Shown: positions 23,601-31,189 of the stretch, one piece after another | Layout of the letters: each line of letters opens with the position of its first letter | How positions within the stretch are numbered: position 1 is the first letter of the stretch | Source: Bugula neritina | Taxonomy: Eukaryota > Animalia > Bryozoa | Assembly (NCBI GenBank): GCA_964035545.1 | Contig: OZ037773.1 | Span: 6,663,751 to 6,727,750 of the forward strand | DNA: 64,000 bases | Reading direction: 5' to 3' | Position numbers and translations under genes: made by a program | Notes under the pieces: model-generated | Seen by the model: only the letters and a program-made list of their open reading frames with translations | What the model was told of the DNA's origin: nothing | Databases searched by the model: none

Positions 23601-26600
23601 TCTGTATCAATAACCGGCAGCTTTCCAATGATATAAAAGAAAGTTGCAGGTTGGCAAAAGCTATAAGATCACAGTTATAAATAAAATGCTTTGTAACCCC
23701 TCATTCACACTTACCGTATCGTACGCCGTAACAGCAAAAATAAAATGGCGACGCTGTTGCATTTTGTCAACGGGTGTTCACACATTGCCGTAAAAATACA
23801 ACGCATGACGTTGAGTTGTGACCAATCACAATGAGGTTAACTTTTGTCTGCGGTGATTTGAATGCCTTTTAATATTACTTACAAATTATTCGAAACATTC
23901 TTATCAAAAGATGTTATATAAATGCTATTTACTAAATAAAAGCAATTACATGAAAAGAATCTTTCTTTTAAATATATCCGTTTTTAAAATAATTGTGCAA
24001 ACTAATTTAAATAATGAATATTTAAGCCGTCCAAATCATTTTTAAGTTTTTGGTTTGTTTGCTTGATTTTGTAATTAGGGAAAGCTAGATTTTTAAGCTG
24101 AGTTTAATTCAAACAAACCGGATAAAGATTTTTTAATCTTTTAAATCTTTTGAATTGGTTAAATTAAATCAAAAATAAGTGATTAAAATAAACTATCGAA
24201 ATAGTTCTTTAAATTTTAGTACCAGATCAACTCTACCCAATAGGAGCCCGCCGTGATTTTTTGAATCAAACACTGCTTGATCAACGCCGCAACGTATACC
24301 GGAGTACGATTTAGCCCGGATGTTAACAAAAATCGCTAAAATTTGCTGTTACGGCGTACGGTACGGTAAGTGTGAATAGGGGGTAAGTCTTCACTATTTT
24401 GTTAAACTCCTCATCTCTTCTTCCAAAAGGTTCCGTGTTAAAATCTCGAATTAAAAAGATCAGATTGTCATAAAGAGCCGCAGTCTGAGTAGAAAGTCTT
24501 ATTCCGGGCATTTTTCCATACCAAGTACAAGTCTGAAAATAATTAAAATCTACATAACTATTATTTATACAGAAGATTCTAAAAAACGAGAGGTTGGGGA
24601 TTAGCAATGGTGTAATCACTTATCCAAATTAATGGTTTAAACCAACATAGTTTCAACTAATAATTGAAACAATATGTCCAACACCACAAAGCAATAATTA
24701 TTTTTAAACAAAGGCAAGACAAACTCAAAAATCAAAAGATTTTCTCACTTGCAACAGTTCTAAATCTTTCCCTTCAAAGGTTTCTTTCAGGTTGACAATC
24801 TGAACATTAGATACTTCACAGCCCATGTATAGGATGAGGATATCCAATGCTTTGTCATTGTACATTGTATCCCCTAATCCTTGGCAGTCCACCAGTAATA
24901 TTGCTTTCTACAAGTATTATTTGCTTAGCTAAATATCAAATGAGTACATTTAGTTTTATTTTCATAAAACAAAAGCATATATATATATATATGTACACAC
25001 ACACACACACACACACACACACACACACACACACACACACACACACACACACACACACACACACACACACACACACACACACACACACACACACACACAC
25101 ACACACACACACACACACACACACACACACACACACACACACACACACACACACACACACACACACACACACACACACACACACACACACACACACACAC
25201 ACACACACACACACACACACACACACACACACACACACACACACACACACACACACACACACACACACACACACACACACACACACACACACACACACAC
25301 ACACACACACACACACACACACACACACACACACACACACACACACACACACACACACACACACACACACACACACACACACACACACACACACACACAC
25401 ACACACACACACACACACACACACACACACACACACACACACACACACACACACACACACACACACACACACACACACACACACACACACACACACACAC
25501 ACACACACACACACACACACACACACACACACACACACACACACACACACACACACACACACACACACACACACACACACACACACACACACACACACAC
25601 ACACACACACACACACACACACACACACACACACACACACACACACACACACACACACACACACACACACACACACACACACACACACACACACACACAC
25701 ACACACACACACACACACACACACACACACACACACACACACACACACACACACACACACACACACACACACACACACACACACACACACACACACACAC
25801 ACACACACACACACACACACACACACACACACACACACACACACACACACACACACACACACACACACACACACACACACACACACACACACACACACAC
25901 ACACACACACACACACACACACACACACACACACACACACACACACACACACACACACACACACACACACACACACACACACACACACACACACACACAC
26001 ACACACACACACACACACACACACACACACACACACACACACACACACACACACACACACACACACACACACACACACACACACACACACACACACACAC
26101 ACACACACACACACACACACACACACACACACACACACACACACACACACACACACACACACACACACACACACACACACACACACACACACACACACAC
26201 ACACACACACACACACACACACACACACACACACACACACACACACACACACACACACACACACACACACACACACACACACACACACACACACACACAC
26301 ACACACACACACACACACACACACACACACACACACACACACACACACACACACACACACACACACACACACACACACACACACACACACACACACACAC
26401 ACACACACACACACACACACACACACACACACACACACACACACACACACACACACACACACACACACACACACACACACACACACACACACACACACAC
26501 ACACACACACACATATATGCATATGCATATGCATATATATGCAAAGACCAATGCAATGAACATTCAATAAACTTGAAACCCATGAAAATAACAAAATTCC

Positions 26601-29600: not shown

Positions 29601-31189
29601 TGTGTGTGTGTGTGTGTGTGTGTGTGTGTGTGTGTGTGTGTGTGTGTGTGTGTGTGTGTGTGTGTGTGTGTGTGTGTGTGTGTGTGTGTGTGTGTGTGTG
29701 TGTGTGTGTGTGTGTGTGTGTGTGTGTGTGTGTGTGTGTGTGTGTGTCTATATTATAGAAAGTTTTAAACAAACCTCCAGCTGTAATGTCCTCTGGGAAA
29801 GAGACCACCTGAACAGGCTTAGCATTTGGGTTTATCCAGTTTATAAAGGCAGCTTTCTACACAAAACAGAAAATATTAAAACAAAATGAAATGACTCTAG
29901 TAGCCAGATATCTTATTTATCATATTTTAATTCTCAAAATTAAATGAACATACACAGTTATGTTTGTTTGCATAATTTACTGATTTTGTGTTTATCAAGG
30001 AAACATTTAAAAAACAGTTTTAAATCTAAAAAAAAATTTAATCAAATAAATTCAACTGAGTTTTCAACACACAACTTGAAGTATAATATGATTGAGCATA
30101 TTTAACAGTGTCTGAATGGAAGCAATTTTTGTAAAAAGCGTTTAACCCAAGGTAATGCAAAGTGCGAAAGTTTAAGAAAACTCACAAGCTAGATTAAACC
30201 AGCTTATATGGCTACATGTTGACAGTAAACAAACTTATATTTAATCAAATAATTGACTCCGGATAGAAAATGCCTTGCTTATATATAAAACCTAAAAGAT
30301 AGCCACACGCAAATCATAGTAGCAAATGCTAAAAATAGCAGAGGAGAAAGTAGTAGATTAAATTCCTCATAAAAAGCCTAGAAAGATTTGTTCTATGGAA
30401 AGCGTTTGGTAAAACTTATGAGAATTAGGAAAAAACTTCAAGTTATTAAAACTTTTGTAGCTGATTCACAAACTCTGAAGGGATTTTACACAAAAAATTT
30501 AAAAAGTTTTTCACTCAGTGAACTATAGAGCAGGTGTATATATGTTGCAAGAACTACACACCTATCTCTTGTCTTACAGGGACGGTGATCATGTAGCCTT
30601 TGATCTTGAGCAGCTTAATTTACTCTATACTAAGCTTAGTGTGAAGCTCATAAGCTTTCTTTTTTTAATAATTTATTTCTTATCTTGTATAGATCTGATG
30701 TGTAGAAACAGTACGACTGTGGAATGTCAGATTCTTTCAAGTAATATATTATTATGATTATGAGATATAACATCTGCAAACTTGTGAGGCTGAGGCCATC
30801 ATAATATTATAATGGTATAAGGCTATAAGTAGATTGCAGTCTTTAATATCATGTATTACTATATTTAATATTATGTTCAATATTATTTAAATATCACTGC
30901 CTTGCCATTAGCTACTGGGCACTGCTAGTAAGATGAGTTTGTGGTTGCCGTTTGCATGAACTCATGGCTGTGGTTTCATACAATGTAACTGTTACTAAAC
31001 ATTGAATGAAAAATCCATTCAAACACAGTGATATATATGTTAGTAAAGAAAAGGCCTGCAGAAGATTTTATGGATTCACTATTCACTATTGTATAATATG
31101 ATTTGAATATACTTAGAAGAAGAAGACATGTGAAGCTAACTTACAACTTCACTTTTGATTGCTGAGACTTTGCTGGCTGCTGAAGACAT
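20651..31189 (-). CDS. Atlastin-like GB1/RHD3-family (dynamin superfamily) GTPase with a charged helical tail and C-terminal CaaX, ~586 aa
   Basis: Exons 31189-31145, 29856-29775 (KPVQVV), 27390-27233 (G1 ITGKLRSGKSFLLN), 26729-26604 (G2 VTHGIWVW), 24907-24749 (G3 LLVDCQG...DLELLQ), 24532-~24395 (G4 LIFLIRDF; donor uncertain), 23339-23198 (IRRSFSFISTYTMPEPG), 22923-22811 (DEEFLQAAKQL), 22751-22704, 22181-22068, 21784-21657 and 21158-20651 (ends KPSKCKVM*). All phases are compatible. Motifs parallel atlastin GAFRKGKS, TTGIQIW, DTQG, LIFLVRDW and CFLLPHPG. The frame is also open upstream of the ATG, so the N-terminus may be longer. Confidence 0.85.
22191..22630. repeat. 17-bp minisatellite (AGACACAGAGCACCTGT), ~25 copies, filling most of a GTPase intron
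   Basis: Tandem array degrading rightwards, some units with extra CA; source of the four Cys-rich repeat ORFs at 22129-22722. Confidence 0.95.
23697..24383. mobile_element. Non-autonomous MITE, PIF/Harbinger (Tourist)-like, 687 bp
   Basis: ~42-bp TIRs: left CCCCTCATTCACACTTACCGTATCGTACGCCGTAACAGCAAA, right (reverse complement) CCCCCTATTCACACTTACCGTACCGTACGCCGTAACAGCAAA. 3-bp TAA duplication at 23694-23696 and 24384-24386. AT-rich non-coding interior. Confidence 0.9.
24995..26512. repeat. Giant pure (AC)n microsatellite, ~759 units
   Basis: Uninterrupted 1518 bp in the intron between the G2 and G3 exons. Confidence 0.98.
28576..29747. repeat. Giant pure (GT)n microsatellite, ~586 units
   Basis: Uninterrupted 1172 bp in the intron before the P-loop exon; reverse-complementary to the 24995-26512 tract. 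Confidence 0.98.

What the first reader, a model, noticed from the sequence alone, without database searches (positions are those of the whole stretch)
24995..29747. Inverted pair of kilobase-long pure microsatellites bracketing exactly the P-loop and switch-I exons: candidate dsRNA splicing or circRNA switch
Seen: the minus-strand pre-mRNA reads exon 2, 27 nt, (CA)586, exon 3 (GxxRxGKS), exon 4 (G2 Thr), 91 nt, (UG)759, 87 nt, exon 5. The two tracts are perfectly complementary, so a stem of up to 1172 bp can loop out 2063 nt containing both catalytic exons (158+126 = 284 nt). This would place the exon 2 donor next to the exon 5 acceptor. Joining exon 2 to exon 5 frameshifts to ESNITGGLPRIRGYNVQ*. 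Established: inverted intronic repeats promote back-splicing, exon skipping and ADAR editing; CA repeats bind hnRNP L, UG repeats bind TDP-43, and (CA/TG)n can form Z-DNA. Inference: this could be a microsatellite-built, length-tunable switch on a GTPase (skipping/NMD versus a 284-nt circRNA), or a recombinational inversion substrate. Nothing else in the window approaches this repeat length or purity.
Basis: partly seen in the sequence, partly recalled or inferred. Interest (0 to 1): 0.85.

Follow-up and report, generated by a model that had tools for sequence, protein, structure and literature searches.

The report
Two giant inverted microsatellites in GTPase introns
Two kilobase-long, perfectly pure CA/TG microsatellites in opposite orientation do sit in the introns around two catalytic exons of an atlastin/GBP-like GTPase gene. 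They look like products of a genome in which such tracts routinely over-expand rather than a conserved RNA switch, and no RNA data were available to test whether they affect splicing.

Summary
(AC)759 lies at 24995-26512 and (GT)586 at 28576-29747, both 100% pure. They sit in introns 4 and 2 of a minus-strand GBP/atlastin-family GTPase gene and bracket the P-loop and switch-I exons (158 + 126 nt).

Such tracts are a genome-wide habit. There are 705 pure AC/GT tracts of at least 50 units in 216 Mb, with a mean near 184 units. A sample of 20 ran from 63 to 814 units.

Two tracts this long within 2 kb are still rare, with about 0.001-0.02 such inverted pairs expected. Close pairs elsewhere are not preferentially inverted (about 5 direct, 3 inverted).

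A relative about 12% diverged (metagenome contigs L029/L030) has a GT-type microsatellite at the same intron-4 site. It has no tract beside the exon-2 donor, only a 44-nt degenerate CA/CG tract elsewhere in intron 2. A contig from another individual appears to run across the (GT)586 site. Five paralogues checked lack tracts.

No RNA run exists, so skipping, back-splicing and editing stay untested, and tract lengths could not be checked with spanning reads.

Verdict: real, expansion-prone microsatellites. RNA pairing is physically plausible, but a selected switch is unsupported.

The parts
28576..29747 (-). (GT)586 on the + strand, which reads (CA)586 in the minus-strand pre-mRNA. It lies in intron 2 and starts 27 nt after the exon 2 donor.
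   Evidence: 1172 nt, 100% pure. It is absent at this position in the relative L029/L030. X1 contig record 8 runs on 894 letters past 28565.
24995..26512 (-). (AC)759 on the + strand, which reads (UG)759 in the pre-mRNA. It makes up 1518 of the 1696 nt of intron 4 and ends 87 nt before exon 5.
   Evidence: The relative has (GT)23(GCGT)>=17 at the homologous place and its contig ends inside the repeat. The X1 contig stops at the tract edge.
29775..29856 (-). Exon 2 (82 nt, phase-1 end), donor GTTTGT.
   Evidence: It is 92.8% identical in the relative and was recovered as protein P0001.
29748..29774 (-). The 27-nt intron flank between the exon 2 donor and the CA tract.
   Evidence: 26 of 26 aligned bases are identical in the relative, after which homology stops.
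27233..27390 (-). Exon 3 (158 nt), carrying the P-loop GKLRSGKS.
   Evidence: Pfam GBP PF02263 profile positions 12-42, E 2e-4. The nearest solved chains are atlastin-3 and atlastin-1, E 8e-5. It is 98.1% identical in the relative.
26604..26729 (-). Exon 4 (126 nt), the switch-I region (..GTDSVTHGIWVW..).
   Evidence: Pfam GBP profile positions 44-67. It is 94.4% identical in the relative.
24749..24907 (-). Exon 5 (159 nt), carrying the G3 motif DCQG.
   Evidence: Pfam GBP profile positions 75-126, E 3e-4. Frame checked.
26513..28575 (-). The 2063-nt segment between the tracts, which the stem would loop out. It holds the 3' part of intron 2, exon 3, intron 3, exon 4 and the 5' 91 nt of intron 4.
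   Evidence: It is single-copy in the assembly. X1 DNA contigs cover it fully at 95.5-100% identity. The part 27742-28575 has no counterpart in the relative.

Best explanation
These are two ordinary but hyper-expanded (AC)n/(GT)n microsatellites that happen to lie in opposite orientation in introns 2 and 4 of a GBP/atlastin-family GTPase gene. In this genome AC tracts, once they exist, usually grow to hundreds of pure units.

The intron-4 tract is an old microsatellite locus, shared with a diverged relative. The giant intron-2 tract beside the exon-2 donor is young and variable.

The inverted arrangement is most likely incidental rather than selected. As a by-product (inferred, not shown), transcripts that carry both tracts before splicing could pair them over up to 1172 bp. 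That would favour exon 3-4 skipping (frameshift, probable NMD) or a 284-nt circular RNA, as any intronic reverse-complementary pair does.
For: Genome-wide class:
- (AC)50 matches 94,730 positions and (AC)51 matches 94,025, so there are 705 pure tracts of at least 50 units with a mean near 184 units.
- Twenty sampled tracts measured 63-814 pure units, four of them 470 or more.
- On contig C1, 34 of 47 T-anchored tracts of at least 15 units exceed 50 units.

No preference for inverted pairs:
- Within 10 kb the partial catalogue gives about 5 direct and 3 inverted pairs besides this one.
- Neither the two direct pairs checked (L008, L021) nor this pair has any flank homology.

Not a family feature:
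- Five paralogue loci have no AC/GT tract of 8 or more units.

Comparative data:
- L029/L030 are colinear with 31690-26414, with exons 93-98% and introns 86-90% identical.
- They have a GT-type tract at the same intron-4 site.
- They have no tract after the conserved 26-nt donor flank.

Another individual:
- X1 contig record 8 continues 894 letters beyond 28565 at full depth. A 31-mer contig could not do this through a long pure tract (plus my own knowledge of de Bruijn graphs).
Against: Two tracts of at least 586 units with a gap of 2063 nt or less are expected only about 0.001-0.006 times per genome in inverted orientation under uniform placement. Allowing the observed roughly 4-fold clustering raises this to about 0.003-0.02. 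The coincidence is therefore real, although it was noticed post hoc.

The relative also carries a complementary pair around the same two exons, a 44-nt CA/CG tract against (GU)23(GCGU)>=17, able to form a helix of about 42 bp. The pairing potential may therefore be older than the split.

Tract lengths are unverified by reads. There are no RNA data either way.
Confidence: 0.6

Rival explanations
1. A functional reverse-complementary pair. The CA and UG arms are kept because their pairing loops out the P-loop and switch-I exons. This would set the ratio of productive mRNA to the skipped, NMD-targeted isoform or to a 284-nt circRNA, with tract length as a tunable dial.
For: The arms are perfectly complementary and bracket exactly exons 3-4, and skipping frameshifts. 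The closeness of two such long tracts is unexpected by chance. The relative also has complementary YR-alternating tracts in introns 2 and 4, able to form a helix of about 42 bp. Reverse-complementary matches are reported to promote both back-splicing and exon skipping (PMC8330042, listed).
Against: The position and length of the CA arm are not conserved, and it is probably not long in individual X1. Paralogues lack tracts. There is no excess of inverted pairs genome-wide. Any YR-alternating tract pairs with (GU)n through G-U wobble, so the helix in the relative needs no selection. No RNA data exist. Three literature searches found no precedent for microsatellite-built pairs.
Confidence: 0.12
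2. An assembly artefact. One or both tracts are much shorter in the real chromosome, and their kilobase length or purity is a product of long-read consensus or assembly.
For: Both tracts are 100% pure over 1.2 and 1.5 kb. No second copy or haplotig exists to compare. An independent short-read contig seems to cross the (GT)586 site.
Against: The same assembly holds 705 such tracts with a broad, smooth spread of lengths from 63 to 814 units, some with natural interruptions. The flanks are unique and colinear with an independent relative, which has a microsatellite at the same intron-4 place. The X1 contig breaks at the AC-tract edge, as expected for a real tract of at least 31 nt. X1 differs from the assembly by 0-4.5% per contig (2.7% and 4.5% in the two longest), so it is another individual, and a short allele there means polymorphism rather than error.
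Confidence: 0.15
3. A DNA-level link between the arms. The two tracts did not expand independently. As long inverted repeats they may interact by gene conversion, hairpin-induced replication slippage or inversion of the 2-kb segment, and so co-expand and stay homogeneous. They would also be a substrate for flipping exons 3-4.
For: Chance expectation for the pair is low. Both arms are pure in this lineage, and both carry CG-containing variants, (CACG) and (GCGT), in the relative.
Against: No inverted allele was seen. The X1 contigs are colinear within the segment, though none bridges a tract in view. The parallel CG variants can arise from common transitions amplified by slippage. The 2-kb spacer is long for cruciform-driven instability (my own knowledge). 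This is a single case.
Confidence: 0.08

Closest known systems
Intronic reverse-complementary matches that drive back-splicing and exon skipping. Examples are Alu pairs in human, RCMs in C. elegans (PMC8330042) and the repeats flanking Drosophila laccase2. All but PMC8330042 are from my own knowledge.
   Same: Two complementary sequences lie in the introns on either side of internal exons of one pre-mRNA. Pairing would bring the downstream donor next to the upstream acceptor.
   Different: The arms here are pure dinucleotide microsatellites of 1.2 and 1.5 kb, not transposon copies of 30-300 nt. They can pair in any register. No circular or skipped RNA has been observed.
Mouse Sry circular transcript, flanked by very long inverted repeats (my own knowledge).
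   Same: Kilobase-scale inverted repeats bracket the circularised exon.
   Different: The Sry arms are a complex-sequence palindrome and the circle is documented. Here the arms are simple repeats and the circle is hypothetical.
Intronic CA repeats bound by hnRNP L, and UG repeats bound by TDP-43 as at CFTR exon 9 (my own knowledge).
   Same: A CA tract lies 27 nt downstream of a 5' splice site and a UG tract 87 nt upstream of a 3' splice site. These are positions where such repeats are known to modulate splicing in a length-dependent way.
   Different: The known cases have tens of units, not hundreds. Whether this animal's hnRNP L and TDP-43 orthologues act here was not tested.
Hyper-expanded, pure microsatellites as unstable neutral DNA.
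   Same: The tracts are pure dinucleotide arrays, there are many like them across the genome, and length differs between lineages and probably between individuals.
   Different: The length distribution in this genome is unusually top-heavy, and two of the longest tracts lie 2 kb apart.
GBP/atlastin family of large GTPases (the host gene).
   Same: The gene has a GxxxxGKS P-loop, a switch-I Thr region and a DxxG motif. Exons match Pfam PF02263 in order, and the nearest solved chains are atlastins.
   Different: Each exon alone scores just under the Pfam cut-off.

Membership tests
Microsatellite (expansion-prone simple repeat) | Head-to-tail array of a 1-6 nt unit | tested here: met
   TRF finds period 2, 759.5 and 586 copies, 100% matches.
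Microsatellite (expansion-prone simple repeat) | Belongs to a genome-wide population of like tracts | tested here: met
   There are 705 pure tracts of at least 50 units. The sampled lengths were 63-814 units.
Microsatellite (expansion-prone simple repeat) | Length differs between individuals or lineages | tested here: inconclusive
   The relative lacks the intron-2 tract at that place and has (GT)23(GCGT)n in intron 4. The X1 contig appears to cross the GT site, but its letters were not shown.
RCM-flanked circRNA / exon-skipping locus | Reverse-complementary sequences in the two introns flanking the exon(s), on one transcript | tested here: met
   (CA)586 is in intron 2 and (UG)759 in intron 4 of the minus-strand gene. 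The duplex is worth about -4.2 kcal/mol per unit.
RCM-flanked circRNA / exon-skipping locus | Back-splice junction reads (26604>27390) | not testable with these tools
   No RNA run holds the locus. Only three runs, kept as contigs, were offered, and no joints were seen in them.
RCM-flanked circRNA / exon-skipping locus | Skip junction reads (29775>24907) | not testable with these tools
   As above.
RCM-flanked circRNA / exon-skipping locus | Arms conserved in relatives or paralogues | tested here: inconclusive
   The relative has a 44-nt CA/CG tract at a different place in intron 2 and a GT-type tract at the same place in intron 4. Five paralogue loci have none.
GBP/atlastin large GTPase (host gene) | P-loop, switch I and G3 motifs in order, matching the family profile | tested here: met
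   Exons 3, 4 and 5 hit PF02263 profile positions 12-42, 44-67 and 75-126. Atlastin-3 and atlastin-1 are the best solved matches.
GBP/atlastin large GTPase (host gene) | Score above Pfam's gathering cut-off for the whole protein | tested here: inconclusive
   Single exons score 20.9, 12.6 and 20.7 bits against a cut-off of 21.1. The spliced protein has no reference and was not submitted.
Assembly artefact | Tract length contradicted by spanning reads of the same individual | not testable with these tools
   Read laying refuses stretches with long repeats, and the runs are 31-mer contigs.

The most novel reading that the evidence does not exclude
An old pair of complementary microsatellites flanking the two catalytic exons of a GBP/atlastin-type GTPase acts as a register-free, mutation-tolerant RNA clamp. 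Transitions in the CA arm still pair with (GU)n by wobble. Its rapidly changing length would set how much pre-mRNA is diverted to a skipped, NMD-targeted isoform or a 284-nt circRNA. This would give heritable, quickly evolving dosage variation of an immunity- or membrane-related GTPase, and possibly a source of (CA)n/(UG)n small RNAs.
Probability: 0.1. Interest if true: 0.7.

Novelty: new variant of a known kind. Interest (0 to 1): 0.3.

Why it matters
If the pair does pair in RNA, it would be a clean natural example of a splicing or circularisation element built only from microsatellites. Its strength would change at microsatellite mutation rates, linking repeat instability directly to the dose of a GTPase.

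If it is incidental, as I think more likely, the useful result concerns the genome. AC/GT tracts here are few but mostly very long and pure. That matters for assembly quality control and for studies of repeat-expansion bias. It also bears on how to read any similar pair flagged elsewhere in this scan.

Tried and rejected
**Reads and runs**
- Only three runs were offered, all kept as contigs and none on record as RNA.

**Genome census**
The length sample therefore stayed at 20.

**Other copies of the locus**
- The 2062-nt spacer is single-copy, so there is no haplotig or second copy to compare.
- Fetching the X1 contig through an ORF on the + strand beside the tract found no candidate. The exon-2 ORF search found the JGI relative instead.
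- A metagenome scan with exon 3 gave only distant homologues, 39-68% aa identity.

**Origin by duplication**
- Inverted duplication or a transposon origin of the arms is rejected. No flank homology or TIR exists around the tracts.
- There is no homology between the relative's 186 nt and the window's 834 nt of intron 2.

**Earlier work**
- Literature searches found no paper on microsatellite pairs as circRNA or skipping elements (one search was a malformed query).
- Look-ups of the scan's earlier notes for similar tracts found nothing relevant.

**Not attempted**
- The spliced full-length protein has no reference, so it was not submitted to any search.
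Full report
**1. The observation**

The window is eukaryotic DNA of about 34% G+C. It maps to G000:C9:6663751-6727750 of a 216-Mb assembly in 321 contigs.

A regex scan and Tandem Repeats Finder agree on two tracts: (AC)759 at 24995-26512 and (GT)586 at 28576-29747. 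Both have 100% matches and no indels. Only one other AC/GT tract of 8 or more units exists in the 64 kb, (GT)13 at 63776.

**2. The gene**

Exons on the minus strand:

| Exon | Coordinates | Length | Content |
|---|---|---|---|
| 1 | ATG at 31189 | | start codon |
| 2 | 29775-29856 | 82 nt | |
| 3 | 27233-27390 | 158 nt | P-loop GKLRSGKS |
| 4 | 26604-26729 | 126 nt | ..GTDSVTHGIWVW.. (switch I) |
| 5 | 24749-24907 | 159 nt | DCQG (G3) |

- The splice sites checked are the acceptors of exons 2-5 (all AG) and the donors of exons 2-5 (all GT), so introns 2-4 have GT..AG ends.
- Exons 3, 4 and 5 hit consecutive segments of Pfam GBP PF02263, at profile positions 12-42, 44-67 and 75-126.
- Exon 3 is nearest to atlastin-3 and atlastin-1 among solved chains.
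- The last-exon ORF ends in CKVM.
- Exons are 93-98% identical to a relative against 86-90% for introns, which supports the exon model.

In order they are: 27 nt, a 1172-nt CA tract, 1185 nt, exon 3, a 503-nt intron, exon 4, 91 nt, a 1518-nt UG tract, 87 nt, exon 5. The UG tract is 1518 of the 1696 nt of intron 4. Joining exon 2 to exon 5 gives ...EDITAG ESNITGGLPRIRGYNVQ*.

**3. Is it more than chance?**

Counts across the genome:
- The pattern (AC)50 matches 94,730 overlapping positions and (AC)51 matches 94,025. The genome therefore holds 705 pure tracts of at least 50 units, with a mean length near 184 units.
- The two tracts here supply 1.3% of all (AC)50 matches.
- Twenty tracts taken from the T-anchored list measured 63 to 814 pure units. 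Four were 470 or more and one was 586 or more.
- The distribution is top-heavy. On contig C1, 34 of 47 T-anchored tracts of at least 15 units exceed 50 units. Only 774 A-start tracts of at least 15 units exist genome-wide.

Each tract alone is therefore unremarkable here. I estimate 13-35 tracts of at least 586 units in the genome.

For two of these to lie within 2063 nt in inverted orientation, I expect 0.0007-0.006 cases under uniform placement. Allowing the roughly 4-fold clustering seen in the lists raises this to 0.003-0.02. The pair is genuinely rare, although it was found post hoc.

Inverted pairing is not a habit of this genome. Within 10 kb, excluding split tracts, the partial catalogue gives:
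- Direct pairs at C1:5.53 Mb, C1:20.44 Mb, C1:20.88 Mb, C2:7.64 Mb and C3:3.63 Mb.
- Inverted pairs at C1:2.86 Mb (9.8 kb), C1:11.09 Mb (5.5 kb) and C2:26.16 Mb (8.6 kb).

The two direct pairs checked (L008, L021) and this pair show no flank homology, so they are not segmental or inverted duplications.

**4. Independent sequence**

*Same assembly.* The 2062-nt spacer is single-copy in the assembly.

*Run X1.* X1 is kept as 31-mer contigs and covers introns as well as exons, so it is DNA. Its contigs cover the whole spacer at 0-4.5% difference per contig (2.7% and 4.5% in the two longest), so it is another individual.
- Its contig on the left stops at the edge of the AC tract, as expected for a real tract of at least 31 nt.
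- Its record 8 is 1183 letters long at full depth and lies on 28274-28565 with its letters 895-1183. The 30-letter overlaps between neighbouring records place its last letter at 28274. So 894 letters run on across the place of (GT)586.
- The tool masks repeats and did not show those letters.
- A de Bruijn contig cannot carry more than about 30 letters of a pure repeat (my own knowledge). In X1 the tract is therefore probably short or interrupted. This is an inference.

*A diverged relative.* A search with the exon-2 ORF found protein P0001. Its two JGI metagenome contigs, L029 and L030, are colinear with window 31690-26414.
- The 26 nt after the exon-2 donor are identical. After that there is no CA tract.
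- Instead there are 186 unrelated nt, then a 44-nt degenerate CA/CG tract, then the conserved block that begins near window 27762.
- The window's 834 nt at 27742-28575 have no counterpart.
- In intron 4, at the same place as the window's tract, the relative has (GT)23 followed by (GCGT)17 or more. Both contigs end inside the repeat.

*Run X2.* Its loose end equals the relative's intron 4, so a run under the same organism label carries that lineage.

*Paralogues.* There are 12 other P-loop-exon matches, the nearest at 55-57% aa identity. Five of these loci were checked and none has an AC/GT tract of 8 or more units within 1.5 kb of the P-loop exon.

**5. Mechanism**

Shown:
- The arms are complementary. 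ViennaRNA gives -423 kcal/mol for 100 units, about -4.2 per unit, and no self-structure for either arm alone.
- The stem would enclose both catalytic exons.

Inferred:
- If intron 2 is still present when the UG tract is transcribed about 0.9 kb later, pairing could favour back-splicing or exon skipping. This is reported for reverse-complementary matches in general (PMC8330042).
- Independently of pairing, a CA tract 27 nt after a donor and a UG tract 87 nt before an acceptor sit where hnRNP L-type and TDP-43-type effects are known (my own knowledge).

The relative could form a helix of about 42 bp between its two tracts. Any YR-alternating tract pairs with (GU)n through wobble, so this needs no selection.

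**6. Verdict**

The feature is real in the assembly. It is most likely the meeting of an old intron-4 microsatellite with a young, variable intron-2 expansion, in a genome that over-expands AC tracts.

The RNA-switch reading is physically reasonable but has no positive evidence. The CA arm is not conserved. Assembly inflation cannot be excluded without spanning reads.

Noticed in passing
whole genome G000; sample loci L003-L022: AC/GT microsatellites are few but mostly very long and pure. There are 705 tracts of at least 50 units, with a mean near 184 units, against only 774 A-start tracts of at least 15 units. This is a top-heavy length distribution that suggests a strong expansion bias.
   Followed up: partly
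L006, L008, L011, L015, L021; window 24977-24994 and 26514-26546: Long AC/GT tracts very often abut (AT)n or (ATATGC)n runs. 247 of the 705 tracts are preceded by T.
   Followed up: no
G000 C1:5.530/5.535 Mb, C2:7.636/7.641 Mb, C3:3.627/3.632 Mb: Three direct pairs of long tracts have nearly the same spacing, 4.7-5.1 kb. The one examined (L008) shows no flank homology, so the regular spacing is unexplained.
   Followed up: partly
window 23696-24384: A MITE-like insertion in intron 6 of the GTPase gene, with 43-nt terminal inverted repeats (93% complementary) 603 nt apart.
   Followed up: no
L029, L030 (JGI samples 3300002729, 3300003318) and run X2: Host-derived contigs in two metagenomes, and a run under the same organism label, carry a lineage about 12% diverged in introns from the assembly. 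This suggests a cryptic sister lineage or a species complex.
   Followed up: partly
L029 2557-2600 and 3814-3926: In the relative, both intronic tracts carry CG-containing variants in complementary form, (CACG) in intron 2 and (GCGT)n in intron 4. In the window both are pure. This could be parallel mutation or exchange between the arms.
   Followed up: no
window 22191-22643, 13907-14601, 32932-33226: Other tandem arrays: a 17-mer x26 in an intron of the same gene region, a 27-mer x25.7, and an imperfect (AGT)98 lying in a poly-Thr open frame on the minus strand.
   Followed up: no
G000 C8:13.07 Mb (L024, L025): The two nearest paralogues of the P-loop exon (55-57% aa) lie head to head about 2.7 kb apart. 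At least 12 paralogous P-loop exons are spread over C5, C6, C8 and C9.
   Followed up: no
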